DNA of 63,958 nucleotides, the filler included, from Octopus bimaculoides (taxonomy: Eukaryota), in assembly GCF_001194135.2 (NCBI RefSeq). It is 10 parts of 10 records of this genome, joined end to end, with 100 filler letters (N's around TTAATTAATTAA, not from the genome) between each part and the next. Parts side by side here need not be neighbours in the genome. Positions count along the whole stretch, not along the records: positions 35,387 to 44,820 come from NC_068997.1; 9 more parts are not named here. One strand, given 5' to 3'. This document shows, one piece after another, positions 35,287-44,820 of the stretch; the first letter of the stretch is position 1, and the number at the start of each line of letters is the position of its first letter. Under the pieces are notes generated by a model that was not told the origin of the DNA, ran no database searches, and saw nothing but the letters and a program-made list of their open reading frames with translations. Position numbers and translations under genes: made by a program.

Positions 35287-35539
35287 NNNNNNNNNNNNNN
35301 NNNNNNNNNNNNNNNNNNNNNNNNNNNNNNTTAATTAATTAANNNNNNNNNNNNNNNNNNNNNNNNNNNNNNNNNNNNNNNNNNNNTTATTGCACCTGAA
35401 CATCTGCCACAAACAAAAACTAACTTGCTAGTTAACCTGCCTTTGATGTTGCTGCACCTCTTATGTGTCCGTAGCTTGCACCGGGTACATCTTATAGAGT
35501 TACTACCTACTCCTTTTCTACATACTGAGCAGGGCCATC

Positions 35540-35591
<52 letters not shown>

Positions 35592-36374
35592 ATACATATA
35601 TACATATATGAGAGGCTTCCTTCAGTTTCCATCTGCCAAATCAAATCCAGTGTCGAGGATCTTGTGAGCAGAAAGGTAGAAAACACTTGCCACACAGTGG
35701 GACTGAACTCAGAACCATGTTATTCAGAAGCAAACTTCTTACTACACAGTCATAAAAACAAATAAATAAATGAAGTTATATCTTGGTTAAAACATATTTG
35801 CGTTATTGTCCATAGATTCACTTCTATCTAACATACCTATGTGTTGTTTATCATTTACAATTCTTGCAGATATGGGCTTAGACAGACAGACACACACACA
35901 CACACACAGGAGTGGAGCTTGGCTGTAAGATAATACAGAAATACAGTGTGATGGTTTATTTCCTGTACATAGTTCATCAGCTTGTTTATGTCATTGCAGA
36001 ATATTGGAAAACAACCCAATCCTTAACAGGAAATTCTACAAGTGTAACATTGTGAACCAGCGTAATTAAAAATTTTGTACAATTGAAACCCAAATATTTT
36101 TGTTATAAAGAAAATAAGCAAGATTTAAAAAGAAAATGTCTTTTAAGAAATCGCTTCTTTGGATATGAAGATTCATTCTAAGACCCTATTTGCTAAATGT
36201 ACTTGTTTCAGACAAGAAAACAAGGGAACCTCTTCGTAGTAACTTAACTTGCTAGAAGTAGCTGCCAGATTCTCGAAGGTCTAAAACAGTACCTACAGAT
36301 TTGTTGATAAATTCACCTTCATATGATTATTGAATAATTTGTTCATTGATTATGTTAATAACGTTTATATATAC

Positions 36375-36535
36375 ACGACAGGCTTCTTTCAATTTCCATC
36401 TACCAAATCCACTCACAAGGCTTTGGTTGACCCAAGGCTATAGTAGAAGGCACTTGTCCAAGGTGCCATGCAATGGGACTACACCTGGAACCATGTGGTT
36501 GCGAAGCAAGCTTCTTACCACACAGCCACTCCTAC
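36375..36535 (-). mobile_element. SINE family A 5' half
   Basis: CTACCAAATCCACTCACAAGGCTTTGG...GAACCATGTGG...CTTACCACACAGCCACTCCT. Confidence 0.88.
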
Positions 36536-36561
36536 ACACATATATATATATATATATATAT

Positions 36562-36798
36562 ATCATCATCATCATCGTCGTCGTCATCGTTTAATGTCCA
36601 CTTTCCATACTGGCATGGGTTGGATGGTTTGACTGGGGTCTGAGAAACCAGAAGGCTGCACAAGGCTCCAATCTGATCTGGCAAGGTTTCTACAGCTGAA
36701 TGTCCTTCCTAACACCAACTACTCCAAGAGTGTAGTGGGTGCTTTTTACGTGCCACCGGCAGGCAACGCTGGCAACGATCACGCTCAAATGGTGCTTT

Positions 36799-36802
<4 letters not shown>
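36562..36802 (-). mobile_element. SINE-like family D copy with (GAT)n tail
   Basis: CATCATCATCGTTTAA.GTCCACTTTCCAT...CCAATCTGAT.TGGCA.GGTTTCTACAGCTG. The tail resembles RTE-type 3' ends. Confidence 0.8.

Positions 36803-36881
<79 letters not shown>
36803..36881. repeat. (AT)n-(AG)n microsatellite
   Basis: Seen directly in sequence. Confidence 0.97.
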
Positions 36882-36883
<2 letters not shown>

Positions 36884-37299
36884 AATGTAAGGCAAGCAAG
36901 TTAGACATCAGATGATGGACTCAATTTACAATCGTTATTTTTTAACCACCAAACCACCACTGTTGGACTCACAAAACTTGTATTCAACCCTTTTAATTCC
37001 TGATATCATTTCTATTCTGTGTAAGTCAAACTTTTTTTATATGTATGTATATGTACATTTTTTGTATACACACACACACACATGCACGCACATGCACAAA
37101 CACACACACATACACGCACATTTTGTATTTGTGTTGTTGTTTCCAGCAGTGTATGTTGTGCTTTCAAGGACAGCTTTCCTTTCTACTTCCAACCCAAAAT
37201 GGCCATCCCATTGCAATAACATCATGGTTTTTCCAGTTTTCTCATTGATATTTCCGTCTTTCTTTAATTTACATCAGCAAAAGATACAAACACCTCCTC

Positions 37300-37590
37300 A
37301 TGTGTGTGCGTGTGTGTGTGTGTGTGTGTGCGTGTGTGTGCAGGTATGGGAGCATGTGTATGCATGTGTGTGTGTGCATGTGTATGCATGTGTGTACATG
37401 TGTGCATGTGTATGCATGTGTGTGTATGTATGTGGGTGTGCATGTGTGCATGCATGTCTGCATACGTGCATGCGCATATATGTATGTGGGTGGGTGGGTG
37501 TATGCATGCATGTGTGTGTATCTGTGTTCATGTACCTGTGTGTGTATGTATGTGTCCATGTGTATCTGTGCATGTGTGTGTGTGTGTTAG
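37300..37590. repeat. Degenerate (GT)/(GCAT) simple-sequence tract
   Basis: Seen directly; it produces the spurious Cys/Val and His/Thr ORFs. Confidence 0.92.
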
Positions 37591-37621
37591 TGTACATTTG
37601 TGCTTTTATCTTTTATTTTTT

Positions 37622-37998
37622 CTCTTTTTATCCTTTTTACTTGTTTCCATCATTGGACTGAGGCCATGCTGGGGCACTTCCATGAAGGGTTCAGTCGAAT
37701 GAATCAACTCCAGTGTTGTTTTTTTTTAAGCATGTCTCTTTTGCTGAACTCCTAAGTTACAGGGATGTAAACAAACCAACACTGGTTATCAAGCAGTGGT
37801 GAGGGACAAGTACATGAACAAAGCCACACACACACTTATCTATGACAGGCTTCTTTCAGTTTCCATCTACCAAATCCACTCACAAGGCTTTGGTCAGCCT
37901 AGGGCTATATTAGAATACAGTGGCCCAAGGTGACACACAGTGGGACTGAACCCAGAACCATGTAGTTGGGAAGCAAACTTCTTACCACACAACCACAC
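37622..37998 (-). mobile_element. SINE family A, near full-length, diverged
   Basis: Both conserved halves are present in reverse orientation. Confidence 0.85.
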
Positions 37999-39098
37999 CT
38001 TCGCCAACATTGTATGTGCAAGACAACAGGCTTCAGTACAGTTTCTGCGAACCAAATTCCATTCATAAGGTATTGGTCAGCTCAAGTTAATTGTAGAAGA
38101 CATTTGCTAATGTGTTGTGCAATGATGCAATTTTTTAAACATGGAGCCCTTGCTGCACTTCAAGGCTCACCTCAAATATACTTTGTTATTTCAATTGCTT
38201 TTCATTATTTCTTCTTATATACAATTAAAAACACTTGAATATCAACAATTACACACGCGCACACACACACACACACACACGCATGTACACAACACACACA
38301 CAATTCTAACATCTAGGTGACCCAGTTAGTGCTGGAGTGGATTATATGAAAACACAAGACAGGGCATAGAACAGGAGTTATCTAGAGAACAGCTTGTCAT
38401 CAGTTGACAACAAAATCTCTCTCCTCTCTGTCTTTCTCTGCAAAAATTCAGGAAGTAGAACAACTGCCAATAAAGAGCCGAGCTGGCTCCAAAGTATGTT
38501 GAAGTATGTTAAAGTAGTGCAGTTAATCAATACTGTTTGGAAATGGAGAGTAACTATCAAATGAAAATGTATCACGAATAATTACTAAATGTTAACTGGG
38601 TTACGTAAAAGAAAATTTGGATCAATGTAATTTGGAACTGAACAAGAAAAGTTAAACCTCAACAATAAATTGGTTGCATGGCCTAACGATTAGGGTGTAG
38701 TGCTCACAATCGTTAGATCATCGGTTTGGTTTCTTAACTGGGTGCCATCAAAACCCTTCGTTTCATGTTGCTCTAGTGTTGTGTGGGGATTGGCGTGTCA
38801 AAGAATAGACCTTAAGTTTCCTCTACATGTCATAAAAAGTGACTAAAAGAGGCTGAGGCAGGATTTGCATTCCAGCCTCACAAAACCCTCACCAGTAACA
38901 ACTCATCAAACAGACCCATGGGCTTGGAAGATTGTGCAAAGGTGTCGTCTGCCAAATGGTGGAGGCAGGGATGTACTGTTACTGCGCATGGCCCCATACT
39001 ACTACTAACAAATTGACAAAAGGTACAGAAGATGGTGTGGGGTCGGGGAATTCTATATGAATAAATAGAATTTAACCATTTAATATTGAAATTGGTAA

Positions 39099-39322
39099 AA
39101 GGTGGCGAGCTGGCAGAAATGTTAGCACACTGGGTGAAATGCTTAGTGGCATTTCATCTGTCTTTACATTCTGAGTTCAAATTCCGCCGAGGTCAACTTT
39201 GCCTTTCATCCTTTCGGGGTCGATAAATTAAGTACCAGTGACGCACTGGGGGTCGATGTAATCGACTGCCCCGCCCTCACCCCAAAATTTCAGGCCTTGA
39301 GCCTAGAGTAGAAAAGAATATT
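39099..39322 (+). mobile_element. SINE family B, well-preserved copy
   Basis: AAGGTGGCGAGCTGGCAGAAATGTTAGCAC...TTCTGAGTTCAAATTCCGCCGAGGTCAACTTTGCCTTTCATCCTTTCGGGGTCGATAAATTAAGTACCAG. The central domain resembles the Meta-type SINE domain as I recall it; not verified. Confidence 0.92.
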
Positions 39323-39420
39323 GAAACTGGTAAAATCAAGACACAATTATAATTAAAATGTACAATTAATTGGAAGCATGTTAAATGAAACCTTATTAAT
39401 GCATCTCAAAATAAAACATA

Positions 39421-39572
39421 TGTGGCTGTGTGGTAAGAAGTTTTTTTCCCAACCACATGGTCATAGGTTCAGTCCCACTGCATGGCACCTTCAGCAAGTG
39501 TCTTTTACTGAAGTCTCAATCCCACCAAAGCCTTGTGAGTGGATTTGATAGACAGGAGCTGAAAAAGCCCCA
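39421..39572 (+). mobile_element. SINE family A 5' half
   Basis: GTGGCTGTGTGGTAAGAAG...GGTTCAGTCCCACTG...CCAAAGCCTTGTGAGTGGATTTG. Confidence 0.85.
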
Positions 39573-39589
39573 TCATATATACATATATC

Positions 39590-40113
39590 ATCACCGTCAC
39601 CATTTTCCATGCTGGCATGGGTTGGACAGTTTGACTGGAGCTGGTAAGGCTGCACGAGGCTCCATTGTTTGTTTTGACTTGGTTCCTACACTTGGATGCC
39701 CTTCCAAATGCCAACCTCTCAGTAAAGTGTACTGAGTGCTTTTCATGAGACACATATGAATGTCACTATAATGTAACACTGACGTCTATATACATATATC
39801 CGTATATATTTATATATAGTGTGATCGTTGCTAGTGCCGTCTGACTGAATCCCATGCCGGTGGCACGTAAAAAGCACCATTCGTGTGTGGTCAATGCCAA
39901 TACCGCCTGACTGGCCCTTGCGCTGGTGGCACATAAAAAGCACCCACTACACTCTCAGAGTGGTTGGTATTAGGAAGGGCATCCAGCTGTAGAAACTTTG
40001 CCATATCAGATTGGAGCCTGGTGCAGCTGCCTGGCTTGCCAGTCCTCAGTCAAACTGTCCAACCCATGCCAGCATGGAAAGTGGACGTTAAACGACGGTG
40101 ATGATAATGATGA
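39590..40113. mobile_element. Two family D copies in inverted orientation (~39590-39742 minus, ~39822-40113 plus)
   Basis: TTTCCATGCTGGCATGGGTTGGACAGTTTGACTG (~39604) and its exact reverse complement CAGTCAAACTGTCCAACCCATGCCAGCATGGAAA (~40048). Confidence 0.85.
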
Positions 40114-40446
40114 TGGTCTAAGATGCAGGGACTGAGGTGTAGGAAGTAAATTAGCTTCAAGCAATTTGTAGTAAATATAAAAAACAACTTCCAGGAACAA
40201 TAATGGTTTATTGAGACGGAAGGTTGTGCATTTTTTTCAAATCAAAGAACGGTAAATTGAAAAAAGTTCTTTTTATATTTCATGGCAAGTGACCAGGGCT
40301 GCCGGGTGTATGAATATCTTCAGCTTGAAGAGTTACCTGGAGGATACACCTCACCTGGATATTTACCACTTCTGAGATTCTGCTCACGATGAAACATATG
40401 TAGCCCAGACCTTATCTACTCCATTCCATGACTCTTGGATCATTAA

Positions 40447-40875
40447 TCATCATCATCATCGTTTAACGTCCACTTTCCATGCTAGCATGGGTTGGACAAT
40501 TTGACTGAGGACTGGTGAAACCAGATGGCTACACCAGGCTCCAATCTGATTTGGCAGAGTTTCTACAGCTGGATGCCCTTCCTAACACCAACCACTCCGA
40601 GAGTGTAGTGGATGCTTTTACGTGCCACCGGCACGAAGGCCAGTCAGGCGGTACTGGCGACGGCCATGCTCGAAATGGTGTATTTTACGTGCCACCTGCA
40701 CAGGAGCCAGTCCATTGGCACTGGCAACGATCTCGCTCGAATGTCTTTTCACGTGCCACTGGTACAAGTGCCAGGGAGGCGATGTTGGTAACGATCACGC
40801 TGGTGCTATTTACATGCCACCGGCATGGAAGCCAGGCAGCTTGCTCTGGCAACGATCTCGCTCAGACGGTGCTCT
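40447..40875 (-). mobile_element. Family D copy with about four internal ~60-66 bp minisatellite units
   Basis: Units anchored on TT(T)ACGTGCCACC...CTGGC.AC.G.C..GCTC. Confidence 0.87.
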
Positions 40876-40961
40876 TAGTTGTTATTGTTGTTGTTGCTGA
40901 GAGAGAAATTGACGAAAGAGACAGAAAGTATATGTGCATGTGTGTGAAAGATGGATGGATG

Positions 40962-41003
<42 letters not shown>

Positions 41004-41870
41004 TTGCTGTCACCAAAGTAACTAACAAGACTTTCACTATATAACAGTCTCCTATTAAAAAAAGGTACATACATGATCAACAGGTATTTTTACAGGCAGC
41101 GTAGTGACAGATAAAGACCTAGTCCTTAATAAATTGGAACTGACACATTTTTAAATTTTTGAAAACACCAAATACTTTGAAATGTGCAAATGAGAAATAG
41201 AATATTTTTATAAACAAAGAAAATAAATTAGTTGTAAACCCACTCTTTTGACTCCAATCAGTTTCTGATTTTTAGAAAAATTCAAGTTTTAATTATTTAT
41301 TTATTTATTTATTCACAGAATGCGAATCTAAGGTTCAAAACATAAAAATCTGAAAACCATTCTTTAAGGCTTAAAAATATAGGTTAGAGAAGGTTTTTAA
41401 AATCTAGGCCAAAATTAATAGGAATTGAAATTGTAGAATATATCCCAAGACAAAAGAATGTGCAGATCATTAACTTTTCCCAAAAGCATTGAAAACAATC
41501 AAAGAATAAAGAATATTGATATATTCTGCCTTCATAAAATGAAGATCTACACGAAAAATTTATGTTTAGTAAGAACAAAAGAAAATGTGACTTATTTGTT
41601 TTCAGTATGCTTTAATCTTCATAATTATAAATAAATCAAGTATTCTATAAAGAATTATTTCAGTAAACAAGCATTTTCTTTTTTAATTCAACAGTAATTT
41701 TTTACGTCACTAAAACATTGACTTCAAAAATACTAAATGTATGGGTGTGTGTGTGAAATTGTTCAGCTCAAGTGATTCCCAGAGGGCCCTTGACCCAAGT
41801 TCAAATTTTATGAAGTAGACTAACCTTTCAAAATCCTGGATTCTGTGGTGAGAAAATTCATTTAAATAAA

Positions 41871-42060
41871 AGTGATTCTCAAGTGGAGTTCATGTGACCC
41901 TTGCTGGGGCCATACAAGATTTTGTTGAAATTTATCTGCAATAAATTGGTTCTACTTTCACAATACACAAAATATTTTAACAGTCTTTTTTATGTAATTC
42001 TTTCATAAGTAAAATAGAAATTAAAGGGATTCATGGGTAAAAATTGGTTGAGAACCACAG
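41871..42060. mobile_element. Possible small hAT-type MITE
   Basis: Ends are AGTGATTCTCAA and TTGAGAACCACAG, imperfect short TIRs. No clean TSD. Confidence 0.35.
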
Positions 42061-42070
42061 AAATAAAGAC

Positions 42071-43070
42071 GGCATAACTACAGAGTTCTACCCCCCAGAC
42101 TTTGGAAGGTCATAACTTTCAGAAAAATGAATATTTTGTAATGAAATTTTCTATGCATATAGTATTTACTATGTAGAATCCGAATATACAAGAATTTCCG
42201 GTGAAAGTGTTTTGGAATGGGGGTGGGGGTCAATTTTCGGAAATTCCAACAGNNNNNNNNNNNNNNNNNNNNNNNNNNNNNNNNNNNNNNNNNNNNNNNN
42301 NNNNNNNNNNNNNNNNNNNNNNNNNNNNNNNNNNNNNNNNNNNNNNNNNNNNNNNNNNNNNNNNNNNNNNNNNNNNNNNNNNNNNNNNNNNNNNNNNNNN
42401 NNNNNNNNNNNNNNNNNNNNNNNNNNNNNNNNNNNNNNNNNNNNNNNNNNNNNNNNNNNNNNNNNNNNNNNNNNNNNNNNNNNNNNNNNNNNNNNNNNNN
42501 NNNNNNNNNNNNNNNNNNNNNNNNNNNNNNNNNNNNNNNNNNNNNNNNNNNNNNNNNNNNNNNNNNNNNNNNNNNNNNNNNNNNNNNNNNNNNNNNNNNN
42601 NNNNNNNNNNNNNNNNNNNNNNNNNNNNNNNNNNNNNNNNNNNNNNNNNNNNNNNNNNNNNNNNNNNNNNNNNNNNNNNNNNNNNNNNNNNNNNNNNNNN
42701 NNNNNNNNNNNNNNNNNNNNNNNNNNNNNNNNNNNNNNNNNNNNNNNNNNNNNNNNNNNNNNNNNNNNNNNNNNNNNNNNNNNNNNNNNNNNNNNNNNNN
42801 NNNNNNTACATACATCAAGGTATATTTGTAGAAAATTTCACGAAAAAAATATTTATTTTCCTAGAAGTTAAGAGGAATTTAAGTGGACTGTTGGAATTTC
42901 CGAAAATTGTCCCCCACCCCCCATTCCAAAACATTTTCACCGGAAATTCTTGTATATTCGGATTCTACATAGTAAATACTATATGCATAGAAAATTTCAT
43001 TACAAAATATTCATTTTTCTGAAAGTTATGACCTTCCAAAGTCTGTGGGGTAGAACTCTGTAGTTATGCC
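42071..43070. mobile_element. MITE with ~180-bp terminal inverted repeats and an 8-bp TSD (interior largely a gap)
   Basis: 42071-42252 (GGCATAACTACAGAGTTCTACCCC...GGAAATTCCAACAG) is a near-perfect reverse complement of ~42888-43070. The direct repeat ATAAAGAC lies at 42063-42070 and 43071-43078. Confidence 0.92.
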
Positions 43071-43402
43071 ATAAAGACATCCAACCTTGACAGTGAAAAT
43101 GTTGGGAAGAATTGGTTTAGTTATAAAAAAAAAAAACACACAACTTTTCATGATATTTTTTTTTAATAAATCAAGCATTCTATTTTGTTATGGGAAGATG
43201 TTTTTGTTTATTTTTTTTTGTTTAACTATATTATGGACAACAAAAGTGATTTTGCCTATCTACCATTAATTGTTTCTCTAAATAACGGAGAATTGGTTTA
43301 ATTTTGTCTCCTTCAATTGTCATTTTATAAAATATAAGAAGAATTCAATGCCATCTGTCTTTTTTTTATGGCTGTGAAAAATAGTTTTTGTTACATTATT
43401 TT

Positions 43403-43933
43403 CTATGGACAGAAACTTGTATCGCAGCCAACGTTATGTAGAACTTTTGCTCTGGTGTTGTTTTGAATGACAACATCAACTCTATCGAATTCAACCCCAT
43501 AACGATCAGCTTTATGAACTTCAATGGTTATATTGTGTGGGCCTGATTCAATGTCATAAACGTTATTCTGCAGTAAATTGCTTGACGGTACCATCCTGTT
43601 GGACATGGAATGTGTTTGGAAAGTTCCAATTTCAATAGCATCAGTGTAAAAGTTGACAATATCTTCGTCACCATCATTTGAATAAACGACATTAACACTT
43701 TGAATAGTTATGTCATTCAATGCACAGAAACACAAATGTATTTTCTCACCTTCATGCATCCAGACAGTTTCTTGCATCGATGCTGCAGAACGGGGATGGA
43801 CAGGATATTTGATTTGGGATTCGAAATATTCCGCTTCAACTGAAAAAGAGACTTCAAAGTCTGTAATTTGAGCCCAGGCAATGACAAGCTGAGAAAAGAT
43901 AAAACCCACAAAAACAGTATGATGAGCTCCCAT
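43403..43933 (-). CDS. Putative secreted CBM6/CBM35-like carbohydrate-binding beta-sandwich protein (176 aa, single coding exon)
   Basis: The only long stop-free ORF in non-repetitive sequence. ATG at 43933 has a strong context (AAGATGG). It has a hydrophobic signal-peptide-like N-terminus (MGAHHTVFVGFIFSQLVIAWA-QI) and the ordered motifs VEAE, RSAAS..TVWM, YSNDG, GPHNITI and GVEFDRVDV. AATAAA lies on the minus strand at 43207-43212. The family assignment is by motif recognition only. Confidence 0.8.
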   Translation of the reverse strand: MGAHHTVFVGFIFSQLVIAWAQITDFEVSFSVEAEYFESQIKYPVHPRSAASMQETVWMHEGEKIHLCFCALNDITIQSVNVVYSNDGDEDIVNFYTDAIEIGTFQTHSMSNRMVPSSNLLQNNVYDIESGPHNITIEVHKADRYGVEFDRVDVVIQNNTRAKVLHNVGCDTSFCP

Positions 43934-44420
43934 CTTCAGTAGTTTTGTCTGAAGTGTCAAAAGGCTTCCTGCAACTTCAAAAGGCGTTGTTGATTTGCTG
44001 TCTGTATTTCCAGTTAGACCAGTTAACAATCAAAATATACCTTTCTTGATGTATGTATAAACATGTTTCATTATTTCTTCCGTCAAAAGGGTGCATTTAA
44101 GTTGCATTTTCTGTTAATGACTGGTATCAGTTAGCATGGCAGGTCAAAGGGTATCAGACTGTTACAAAAGATTGTAGTTGGTGAACAGCTAAAATTTTGT
44201 TCTTGTTGATTTCATTTTTGTCATTGTTTTCCTTTTTGCTGTTGTTTTATTTTATTTTCATTGTTATTATTGCCATTGTTGTTTTTCACAATAACTGAAT
44301 ATTGTTTAGAATAAAAATAGTGTTTTTTCATGTGATACATAGAGCTTCAAGCTGACATAGAGCATTTTATCTATAGTTCCATAAAACTTATGCTACAAGA
44401 AGTATACATAGAAAATCTAC

Positions 44421-44820
44421 ACATCATCATCATTGTTTAACGTCCGCTTTCCATGCTAGTATGGGTTGGATGGTTTGACTGAGGACTGGCAAGCCAGGCA
44501 GCTGCACCAGGTTCCAATCTGATCTGGCAAAGTTTCTACAGCTGGATGCCCTTCCTAACACCAACCACTCTGAGAGTGTAGTGGGTGCTTTTTATGTGCC
44601 ATTGCACAGGAGCCAGTCAAGCGGGGCTGGCATCGATCACATTCAGATGGTGCTTTTTACGTGCCACCAGCATGGGAGCCAGTCAGGCGGTACTGGCAAT
44701 GGCCATGCTTGGATGGTGCTTTTTACGTGCCACCAGCACGGGAGCCGATCAAGTGACACTGGCAATGACCACACTCAAATGGTGCTTTTTACATGCCACC
44801 GGCACTGGTATCGACCATGC
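44421..44820 (-). mobile_element. Family D copy with about 3.5 internal minisatellite units, truncated by a gap
   Basis: CATCATCATCATTGTTTAACGTCC...; repeated GGTGCTTTTTACGTGCCACC units. Confidence 0.88.

What the first reader, a model, noticed from the sequence alone, without database searches (positions are those of the whole stretch)
43403..43933. Lone single-exon gene for a secreted, bacterial-style CBM6/CBM35-like lectin domain
Seen: the only clean non-repeat ORF in 64 kb. It has a strong ATG context, a signal-peptide-like start, four Cys (CFC and C-terminal C....C), two N-glycosylation sequons (NIT, NNT), a downstream AATAAA and a candidate 5'-UTR splice acceptor (CTTTTGACACTTCAG, exon starting 43948). 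Established: CBM6/CBM35 modules begin with an EAE Ca-binding motif, continue AS....V, Y.N and G.(N/H).I.I, end with a D.(I/V).V strand, and are mostly appended to microbial glycoside hydrolases. Inference: this is a stand-alone secreted carbohydrate-binding protein in an animal, possibly a lineage-restricted immune, mucus or digestive lectin, possibly of horizontal origin. The loop that often carries a sugar-stacking Trp reads SNRMVPSSN here, hinting at altered specificity.
Basis: partly seen in the sequence, partly recalled or inferred. Interest (0 to 1): 0.75.

Follow-up and report, generated by a model that had tools for sequence, protein, structure and literature searches.

The report
Secreted stand-alone CBM6/CBM35-like domain gene
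A small intact gene in repeat-rich animal DNA encodes a secreted protein consisting of one sugar-binding-module-type fold, best known from bacterial enzymes; it belongs to a large undescribed family and has lost that family's conserved tryptophan loop.

Summary
The ORF is real: minus strand 43933 to 43403, 176 codons, with a signal-peptide-like start, four Cys and two N-glycosylation sequons. The protein itself hits nothing in Pfam or in PDB sequences. An exhaustive phmmer search found 149 relatives (best E 1e-37). Bacterial members carry dockerin or glucoamylase-like domains and reach the Pfam CBM_6 threshold. An AlphaFold2 model built on 27 relatives (pLDDT 84.8) matches almost only CBM35, CBM6 and CBM36 modules in the PDB.

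The suggestion of horizontal origin is not supported. The nearest relative is the N-terminal domain of a 672-aa single-ORF protein on a eukaryote-like contig. That protein belongs to a family of about 600 aa with an uncharacterised C-terminal region. No trace of that region lies anywhere in the piece, which extends about 8 kb downstream of the stop.

The protein keeps 22 of 27 family-conserved positions. Four of the five misses lie in one loop, where a six-residue deletion removed the nearly invariant G..W. A family-invariant Glu sits where CBM35 has its binding-site Asn.

Most likely this is a secreted, probably Ca-stabilised, lectin-like protein with altered or lost glycan binding. Expression, orthologues and ligand are untested.

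The parts
43403..43933 (-). Complete coding sequence: 176 codons plus TAG stop, in one exon
   Evidence: relatives found at E 1e-37
43871..43933 (-). Signal-peptide-like leader, residues 1-21, with predicted cleavage after AWA
   Evidence: hydropathy; helix 3-21 in the model; equivalent leaders in relatives. No dedicated signal-peptide predictor was run.
43463..43855 (-). CBM6/CBM35-like beta-jelly-roll domain, residues 27-157
   Evidence: AF2 strands 27-157; Foldseek PDB hits; family HMM positions 12-180, E 5.6e-42
43829..43837 (-). EAE motif (E33, E35), conserved in 89-95% of family domains; candidate ligands of a structural Ca2+
   Evidence: the Ca role rests on established knowledge of CBM6/35 and was not tested
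43778..43792 (-). RSAAS (R48, A51, S52), nearly invariant in the family
43724..43732 (-). CFC (C68, C70); C70 is shared with the 'FCL' subset of the family and C68 with P0011
43661..43684 (-). YSNDGDED, the family signature Y-S-N-D-G-x-x-D (82-97% conserved)
   Evidence: aligns to RYGNNTGA of the CITase CBM35
43562..43609 (-). Divergent, shortened loop SMSNRMVPSSNLLQNN (residues 109-124); a six-residue in-frame deletion relative to P0011 removes the family's G..W
   Evidence: pairwise alignment; columns G 96%, W 97% missed; lowest model confidence, pLDDT about 65
43484..43507 (-). DRYGVEFD (D143, G146, E148, D150), the last-strand motif; E148 aligns to the Asn, and D150 to the Asp, of CBM35 'AVNLD'
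43409..43426 (-). C-terminal CDTSFC (C170, C175), shared with P0011 (CNAKNC); likely disulfide partners of C68/C70
   Evidence: the pairing is inferred
43526..43534 (-). N-glycosylation sequon N134-I-T
43454..43462 (-). N-glycosylation sequon N158-N-T
43297..43302 (-). ATTAAA, 100 nt after the stop (candidate poly(A) signal)
   Evidence: unverified
43207..43212 (-). AATAAA, 190 nt after the stop (candidate poly(A) signal)
   Evidence: unverified
43949..43963 (-). Acceptor-like CTTTTGACACTTCAG, whose AG ends 15 nt before the ATG (possible 5'-UTR intron end)
   Evidence: unverified and not specific

Best explanation
This is an intact, single-coding-exon gene for a small secreted protein (mature form about 155 aa, 17.6 kDa, pI 4.6). 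The protein consists only of one beta-jelly-roll domain of the CBM6/CBM35 type.

The domain belongs to a large, unnamed family with the signature EAE ... R-S-x-A-S ... Y-S-N-D-G-x-x-D ... G-x-x-W-N ... D-x-Y-G-V-E-I-D. Bacterial members have the domain appended to dockerin or glucoamylase-like modules. Eukaryotic members have it in tandem arrays on mucin-like surface proteins, alone behind a signal peptide, or at the N-terminus of a conserved family of about 600 aa. The gene here is a domain-only relative of that 600-aa type.

Inferred mechanism:
1. The leader is cleaved after Ala21.
2. The domain folds around a structural Ca2+ held by E33/E35 and D150.
3. Two disulfides (C68/C70 with C170/C175) pin down the C-terminal tail.
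4. N134 and N158 may be glycosylated.
5. A ligand, most likely a glycan, is bound at the variable-loop end through the conserved polar and acidic cluster R48, N86, D87, D91, D143 and E148.

The Trp-bearing loop has been deleted, and Glu replaces the canonical CBM35 Asn. Binding is therefore probably altered (charge- or metal-mediated, or a small epitope) or weakened. The protein may act as a soluble lectin, opsonin or decoy.

Shown here: the ORF, the family membership, the fold class, the conserved positions and the loop loss. Inferred: secretion, Ca binding, disulfides, glycan binding and biological role.
For: - The ORF and its features.
- 149 relatives, 25 of them below 1e-10.
- Bacterial members P0007 (30.5 bits) and P0091 (28.9 bits) reach the CBM_6 cut-off of 28.9. 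They carry Dockerin_1 or Glycoamylase domains.
- 15 of 27 short members hit CBM_6 at E <= 1, best 3.9e-6.
- The AF2 model has pLDDT 84.8 and pTM 0.76.
- Foldseek hits: CITase CBM35 at E 1.7e-5; agarase CBM6 (2CDO/2CDP); CBM35 2W3J with TM 0.73 normalised on the target.
- The family profile hits the CITase CBM35 at E 2.3e-4 and the GH87 domain 1 at E 7e-4.
- 22 of 27 conserved columns are kept. The leave-one-out HMM score is 125 bits, against a family median of 147.
- The sister is the N-terminal domain of P0011, which shares CFC and the C-terminal Cys pair.
- No C-terminal-region homology anywhere in the piece, which runs about 8 kb downstream of the stop.
- Stand-alone short members exist elsewhere, including an MMETSP transcript, P0013.
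- CBM35 modules have a conserved Ca site and bind sugar at the variable-loop site on a Trp platform (PMC5408701).
Against: - The protein itself has no Pfam CBM hit, even at E <= 10, and no PDB sequence hit.
- The family's nearly invariant G..W is missing, and Glu stands where CBM35 has Asn. Glycan binding may therefore be lost.
- No orthologue, transcript or exact-match contig was found. The searched collections cover animal genomes poorly, so this counts for little.
- No member of this family has a demonstrated ligand.
Confidence: 0.6

Rival explanations
1. It is a truncated relic of a 600-aa-family gene. Only the N-terminal module survived a deletion or rearrangement, and the ORF is unexpressed or non-functional and simply has not yet decayed.
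For: The sister sequence, P0011, is a full-length 672-aa gene whose domain is followed by about 500 more residues in the same ORF. The octopus-type ORF stops three codons after the shared Cys pair. A functionally important loop is deleted. Repeats and an inverted repeat with an assembly gap lie 330 nt downstream. No orthologue was found.
Against: The 176-codon frame is intact in AT-rich DNA where stops are frequent: an ORF this long appeared in 1 of 300 simulations. At only 34% identity to the sister, it still keeps 22 of 27 conserved columns, the signal peptide, all four Cys and a good start context. The loop deletion is in frame. No remnant of the C-terminal region is left, so the truncation is old, yet the ORF has survived. 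Domain-only members exist in other eukaryotes.
Confidence: 0.2
2. It is the first coding exon of a larger gene. A donor site upstream of the stop would splice it to distant exons outside the piece or in the assembly gap, and those exons would encode the family's C-terminal region.
For: About 40 of the 149 relatives have the domain at the N-terminus of a protein of about 600 aa. The piece covers only about 8 kb downstream and contains a 554-nt gap.
Against: The frame ends in TAG, with a second stop four codons later. No convincing GT donor lies in the last codons: the sequence offers only GTTTCT and GTCCAT. The full-length family HMM finds nothing but this ORF in six frames of the piece. The sister gene is a single uninterrupted ORF.
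Confidence: 0.07
3. It is a recent horizontal acquisition from bacteria, or bacterial contamination of the assembly.
For: The fold is best known from bacterial glycoside hydrolases. Bacterial family members exist at E 2.5e-20.
Against: The ORF is embedded among eukaryotic interspersed repeats and microsatellites. Its GC is 38%, against 27-31% in the flanks. The best hits and the NJ sister are eukaryote-type proteins on large, gene-poor contigs and in a protist transcriptome. It shares the eukaryote-type 'T..S.SN' and 'FC' features rather than the bacterial 'DTG..GSGW' loop.
Confidence: 0.03
4. It is a real secreted protein whose jelly-roll is no longer a lectin and instead binds a protein or another non-glycan ligand.
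For: The aromatic platform is lost and Glu replaces the canonical Asn. One relative, P0143, couples the domain to a MACPF domain. Jelly-roll folds of this class recur in phage tail and fibre proteins.
Against: The rest of the family's conserved polar and acidic cluster is intact. Bacterial relatives are attached to glycan-processing modules.
Confidence: 0.1

Closest known systems
CBM35 modules, e.g. CBM35-1 inserted in the GH66 cycloisomaltooligosaccharide glucanotransferase (PDB 3WNK-3WNP, 5X7G)
   Same: This is the best structural match (Foldseek E 1.7e-5) and the best profile-to-sequence match (E 2.3e-4). The jelly-roll is of about the same size. The strand motifs align: Y-x-N, G-x-H and the final x-x-D-x-(I/L)-x-(L/V).
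   Different: Identity is only 14-15%. Glu (E148) stands where CBM35 has Asn in 'AVNLD'. The Trp-containing 'WGTW' segment is deleted here. This protein stands alone behind a signal peptide and is not part of an enzyme. Two extra disulfides are likely.
CBM6 (Pfam PF03422), e.g. the agarase CBM6 2CDO/2CDP and the LamC CBM6 5FUI
   Same: Structural hits have TM up to 0.72 normalised on the target. Relatives reach or approach the CBM_6 gathering score. The N-terminal E-A-E and the last-strand Asp are typical.
   Different: The window protein itself does not hit the CBM_6 model, even at E <= 10. The family has its own Y-S-N-D-G-x-x-D and G-V-E-I-D signatures.
[quoted passage not shown]
   Same: They are an animal precedent for a bacterial-type CBM used as an innate-immune glucan sensor (PMC7915573). 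That these modules are CBM6-type is from my own knowledge.
   Different: They are modules of a multidomain protease-activating subunit, not a lone domain. No sequence comparison was made here.
N-terminal domain 1 of the GH87 alpha-1,3-glucanase (PDB 7C7D; Pfam CatAgl_D1)
   Same: The profile aligns EAE, the 'AS....V.L..G' stretch and 'YS.DG' to residues 60-136 (E 7e-4). There is also a Foldseek hit and a Pfam hit for P0020.
   Different: It is part of a bacterial enzyme's catalytic unit, and only the first half aligns.
Unnamed family of about 600 aa on eukaryote-like contigs (P0011, P0017, P0020, P0024 and about 35 others)
   Same: The N-terminal domain is homologous. P0011 is the NJ sister (34% identity, E 8e-27) and shares CFC and the C-terminal C....C.
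   Different: Those proteins continue for about 450 residues with conserved motifs (CAEEDNV, PDFTW, DFWW, LYQDGN.RLLP, FRSMWV.DGNADVDHV, HNT.SPDI). These have no significant Pfam or PDB match. The window gene stops after the first domain and has no trace of the rest.

Membership tests
CBM6 / CBM35 fold class (galactose-binding-like jelly-roll CBMs) | Beta-jelly-roll sandwich of about 120-140 residues, superimposable on solved CBM6/35 modules | tested here: met
   The AF2 model has pLDDT 84.8. Foldseek against the PDB gives 75 hits at E <= 1e-3. The top 50 are almost all CBM35, CBM6 or CBM36, with probability 1.00 and TM (normalised on the target) up to 0.73.
Pfam CBM_6 (PF03422) | Score at or above the gathering threshold of 28.9 bits | tested here: not met
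   The window protein gives no hit at E <= 10. The link is transitive only: P0007 scores 30.5 bits, P0091 28.9 bits, and 15 of 27 short relatives hit at E <= 1.
CBM6 / CBM35 | Structural Ca2+ site formed by the N-terminal E-x-E strand and an Asp in the last strand | tested here: inconclusive
   E33, E35 and D150 are present and 89-99% conserved in the family. D150 aligns to the Asp of CBM35 'NLD'. Metal coordination itself was not testable.
CBM6 / CBM35 | Conserved Asn two residues before the last-strand Asp, in the variable-loop binding site | tested here: not met
   Family-invariant Glu (E148, 98%) aligns with that Asn. The role of the Asn is from established knowledge.
CBM6 / CBM35 | Aromatic (Trp/Tyr) stacking platform in the loop before the penultimate strands | tested here: not met
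   The family has G..W in 96-97% of domains. The window protein has a six-residue deletion there and no aromatic residue in 109-124. The profile aligns the family Trp to the second Trp of CITase 'WGTW', so its equivalence to the stacking Trp is uncertain.
CAZy CBM family (any) | Experimentally demonstrated carbohydrate binding by a member | not testable with these tools
   No member of this subfamily has a name or a described ligand in the sources searched.
Unnamed 'YSNDG' domain family (defined here hits) | Signature columns EAE, R-S-x-A-S, Y-S-N-D-G-x-x-D, G-x-H and D-x-Y-G-V-E-x-D | tested here: met
   22 of 27 columns conserved at 70% or more are matched. The leave-one-out HMM score is 125 bits, within the family range of 85 to over 147.
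Unnamed 'YSNDG' domain family | G-x-x-W-N loop | tested here: not met
   The segment is deleted or replaced; about 10 of 158 domains fail a strict G..W motif match.
600-aa eukaryotic family (P0011/P0020 type) | Conserved C-terminal region of about 450 aa after the N-terminal domain | tested here: not met
   The full-length HMM matches only positions 12-180, on the ORF. Nothing else in six frames of 35387-44820 matches. tblastn gives nothing significant.

The most novel reading that the evidence does not exclude
The gene may be a working member of an unrecognised, eukaryote-wide family of Ca-dependent lectin-like domains (the 'YSNDG' domain) that shares ancestry with bacterial CBM6/35. In this animal, the N-terminal targeting module of a 600-aa protein of unknown function would have been released as a soluble secreted protein with a re-engineered binding loop. 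That would make it a new type of animal lectin, opsonin or decoy whose recognition relies on an acidic or metal cluster rather than an aromatic platform.
Probability: 0.3. Interest if true: 0.55.

Novelty: new variant of a known kind. Interest (0 to 1): 0.4.

Why it matters
Stand-alone CBM-type domains encoded by animals are rare. The known example, the glucan-sensing modules of horseshoe-crab factor G, is an innate-immune sensor. This gene gives an entry point to a family found in both bacteria and eukaryotes, with 149 cluster representatives at E <= 1e-3. Only its bacterial fringe reaches an existing Pfam model. The family includes a strongly conserved eukaryotic protein of about 600 aa with no known domain in its C-terminal 450 residues, and a fusion to MACPF. 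A defined ligand for the domain would annotate all of these proteins. The octopus-type variant, with the Trp loop deleted, is a natural test of what that loop contributes. If the gene proves unexpressed, it is an ordinary orphaned gene fragment.

Tried and rejected
- **Direct Pfam scan** of the protein gave only chance hits: TPR_RPAP1 at 16 bits, a phosphonate-binding domain and DUF7076.
- **Direct PDB sequence search** gave only a chance VPS29 match at E 0.04.
- **Single-sequence AF2** was unusable, with pLDDT 46.
- **The word-indexed protein search** returned only the query, or 2-4 proteins, even with alignments. It supplied no names or taxa.
- **Cluster look-ups** gave no informative names. 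The window protein is a singleton 90% cluster held by UniRef and MetaClust.
- **Exact-protein contig look-up**: not on record.
- **tblastn of all 149 relatives, and a full-length family HMM, against the piece**: no further exon.
- **blastn of the piece against the loci of P0011 and P0002**: no shared DNA.
- **Phage collection (tblastn), viral contigs and JGI metagenome contigs**: no relative of the window protein.
- **A scan of bacterial genomes with P0007** matched only its dockerin, so bacterial taxa for the domain remain unknown.
- **Profile of the 600-aa family against PDB sequences**: only chance hits at E > 0.1.
- **Rfam and tRNA scans of the piece**: nothing.
- **A compensated double frameshift in the divergent loop** was considered. 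The +1 frame reads PTGWYRQAIY there. I rejected it because nothing beyond the single Trp matches the family, and a six-codon in-frame deletion explains the alignment.
- **The source organism** was not determined. The repeat content looks cephalopod-like to me, from memory only.

Full report
**1. The observation**

The piece (35387-44820) is AT-rich (24-51% GC in 500-nt windows) and full of microsatellites and interspersed repeats. It contains an assembly gap at 42253-42806.

On the minus strand an ORF runs from ATG 43933 to TAG 43405-43403 and encodes 176 residues. The ATG is the first in the frame and has A at -3 and G at +4.

Residues 1-21 form a hydrophobic leader ending A-W-A. Cys are at 68, 70, 170 and 175, and the sequons are at N134 and N158. 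ATTAAA and AATAAA lie 100 and 190 nt after the stop, and the acceptor-like CTTTTGACACTTCAG is at 43963-43949.

The other long ORFs in the piece are TG-microsatellite translations or run through N. ORF length alone is only moderately unusual: 1 of 300 Markov simulations reached 176 aa or more. GC at codon positions 1/2/3 is 0.50/0.33/0.32. Homology settles that this is coding sequence.

**2. Relatives**

The protein alone hits no Pfam family and no PDB sequence above chance. The word-indexed search finds only the query itself.

The exhaustive phmmer search of 1.84 billion cluster representatives gives 149 proteins at E <= 1e-3, 25 below 1e-10, and a best hit at 1e-37. Domain parsing gives 182 domain hits in these proteins.

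The alignment defines a clear family. Its consensus is lEAE ... RS.AS..TV.L..G ... v.YSNDG.sD ... G.F.T...s..G..WN.F..sG ... G.H ... D.YGVEiD.

Four architectures occur:
- **Tandem arrays.** Two to four copies separated by Ser/Thr/Pro-rich linkers, with a C-terminal hydrophobic anchor (P0002-P0006).
- **Short proteins.** Signal peptide plus one domain (P0013, P0022, P0025 and others). P0013 is from a marine protist transcriptome.
- **About 40 proteins of about 600 aa.** The domain is at the N-terminus, followed by a strongly conserved region that has no significant Pfam or PDB match.
- **Bacterial proteins.** The domain follows a dockerin (P0007) or a 'putative glucoamylase' domain (P0019, P0091, P0120).

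**3. Fold**

The bacterial members reach the Pfam CBM_6 gathering score: P0007 scores 30.5 bits and P0091 28.9 bits, against a cut-off of 28.9. Among the short members, 15 of 27 hit CBM_6 at E <= 1, with a best E of 3.9e-6.

With a 27-sequence alignment, AlphaFold2 gives a confident all-beta model: pLDDT 84.8, pTM 0.76, and strands from residue 27 to 164. Foldseek against the PDB returns 75 hits at E <= 1e-3. The top 50 are almost exclusively CBM35, CBM6 and CBM36 modules. They include the CITase CBM35 at 1.7e-5, MiXBM, the agarase CBM6 2CDO/2CDP, the LamC CBM6 and the CBM35 structures 2W3J, 2W46 and 2WZ8. TM scores normalised on stand-alone modules are 0.6-0.73.

A 40-sequence family profile hits the CITase CBM35 at E 2.3e-4 and the first domain of a GH87 alpha-1,3-glucanase at E 7e-4. 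The viral library gives only generic jelly-roll matches in phage tail and fibre proteins, plus one unnamed 643-aa protein.

**4. What is particular about this member**

It keeps 22 of the 27 columns that are at least 70% conserved. These include E33, E35, R48, A51, S52, Y84-G88, D91, G131, H133, D143, G146, E148 and D150. It scores 125 bits against a family HMM built without it; the family median is 147.

Four of the five misses lie in one loop, residues 109-124; the fifth is a conservative Leu-to-Met change. In the pairwise alignment with its closest relative, six residues (HGTQEW in P0011) are deleted in frame. This removes the G..W that 96-97% of domains have. That loop is also the least confident part of the model.

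In the profile alignments, the family's invariant Glu (E148) falls on the Asn of CBM35 'AVNLD'. The family's G..W falls on CITase 'WG-TW'. CBM35 modules have one conserved Ca site and bind sugar at the variable-loop site on a Trp platform (PMC5408701).

The whole family thus departs from canonical CBM35 chemistry by having Glu where CBM35 has Asn. This member has additionally lost the aromatic segment.

**5. Origin**

In a neighbour-joining tree of 158 domains, the window domain is sister to the N-terminal domain of P0011. Identity is 34% at E 8e-27. The two share the CFC motif and the C-terminal C....C pair.

P0011 is a 672-aa single uninterrupted ORF on a 186-kb contig that also carries copia-like fragments. 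It belongs to the 600-aa family. P0002 and P0003 are also single ORFs, on contigs of 108 kb and 1.19 Mb with sparse genes. The bacterial P0007 sits on a densely coding contig.

A full-length HMM of the 600-aa family matches only the ORF in six frames of the piece (HMM positions 12-180, E 5.6e-42). tblastn with all 149 proteins finds no other exon. After the TAG a second stop follows four codons later.

The gene is therefore a domain-only relative of a longer eukaryotic gene type. Nothing points to recent bacterial transfer or to contamination. The ORF lies between eukaryotic repeats, its GC is close to that of its flanks, and it has the eukaryote-type loop and Cys features.

**6. Mechanism (inferred)**

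- The leader is cleaved after Ala21 and the protein is secreted.
- The jelly-roll is stabilised by Ca2+ at E33/E35/D150 and by two disulfides that tie the C-terminal tail to the CFC strand.
- N-glycans may be added at N134 and N158.
- A ligand is bound at the loop end through R48, N86, D87, D91, D143 and E148.
- Without the Trp segment, binding is expected to be altered or weakened.

The association of the domain with glycan-processing modules in bacteria, and with MACPF in one eukaryotic protein, fits a targeting or recognition role. Factor G of horseshoe crabs shows that animals can use such modules as immune glucan sensors (PMC7915573).

**7. Rivals**

- **Decaying relic of a 600-aa gene (0.2).** It is favoured by the truncation and the loop loss. 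It is disfavoured by the intact frame, the kept signature residues at 34% identity to the sister, and the absence of any downstream remnant.
- **First exon of a larger gene (0.07).** It is disfavoured by the double stop, the lack of a good donor site and the intronless relatives.
- **Recent horizontal transfer or contamination (0.03).**
- **A non-glycan ligand (0.1).** It cannot be excluded.

**8. Limits**

- Expression, orthologues and the source species could not be examined. The collections at hand hold few animal genomes, and the searches that were possible found nothing.
- No family member has a known ligand.

**9. Verdict**

This is a real, intact gene for a secreted, stand-alone CBM6/CBM35-fold protein. 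It is a divergent member of a large unnamed family and lacks the family's Trp loop. Its structural interpretation is supported. Horizontal origin is not supported, and lectin function remains untested. Interest is moderate.

Noticed in passing
window 42071-42229 and 42912-43070 (gap 42253-42806): A 159-nt inverted repeat, 97% complementary, brackets the assembly gap about 330 nt downstream of the ORF's stop. It could be a foldback element or an assembly artefact.
   Followed up: no
window 36578-36755, 40451-40628, 44424-44601 (direct); 39927-40105 (inverted): An interspersed element of about 180 nt occurs in four copies (62-94% identity). At 40616-40863 and 44584-44805 it is followed by tandem units of 66-67 nt. 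Their translations give the recurring 'FTCHRHG.QSGGTGNDH' pseudo-ORFs.
   Followed up: partly
window 36370-36533, 37837-38000; inverted 39422-39585: A second interspersed element of about 164 nt occurs in three copies at 77-83% identity.
   Followed up: no
window 37068-37600: A TG/CA-rich compound microsatellite produces spurious ORFs of up to 249 aa on both strands.
   Followed up: yes
proteins P0011, P0017, P0020, P0024 and about 35 others (locus L001 5001-7019 for P0011): A strongly conserved family of about 600 aa found on eukaryote-like contigs. Each protein has an N-terminal CBM6-like domain, a weak PL4-domain-III-like stretch, and a C-terminal region with the motifs CAEEDNV, PDFTW, DFWW, LYQDGN.RLLP, FRSMWV.DGNADVDHV and HNT.SPDI. 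The C-terminal region has no significant Pfam or PDB sequence match.
   Followed up: partly
protein P0143 (1253 aa): This protein combines the same N-terminal domain, part of the 600-aa family's C-terminal region, PT repeats and a MACPF (pore-forming) domain.
   Followed up: no
locus L003 10001-11602 and 14028-14723: On a 1.19-Mb contig, the three-copy protein P0003 lies 2.4 kb from a second gene of 231 aa with a weak CBM_6 hit. Single-ORF sulfotransferase and ADP-ribosylglycohydrolase genes are next to them, which suggests local paralogue clusters.
   Followed up: no
BFVD entry UPI001E6AA5CF (643 aa): This is the best viral structural match to the model (E 6e-6, 21% identity, TM 0.62, rmsd 2.9 A). 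Its length is close to that of the 600-aa family. No name or host was available.
   Followed up: no
protein P0007 residues 134-174 (locus L004): Summed over its three copies, the bacterial member also exceeds the Pfam DUF7055 cut-off (32.8 bits against 27.6). That DUF may therefore model the central 'YSNDG' part of this domain.
   Followed up: no
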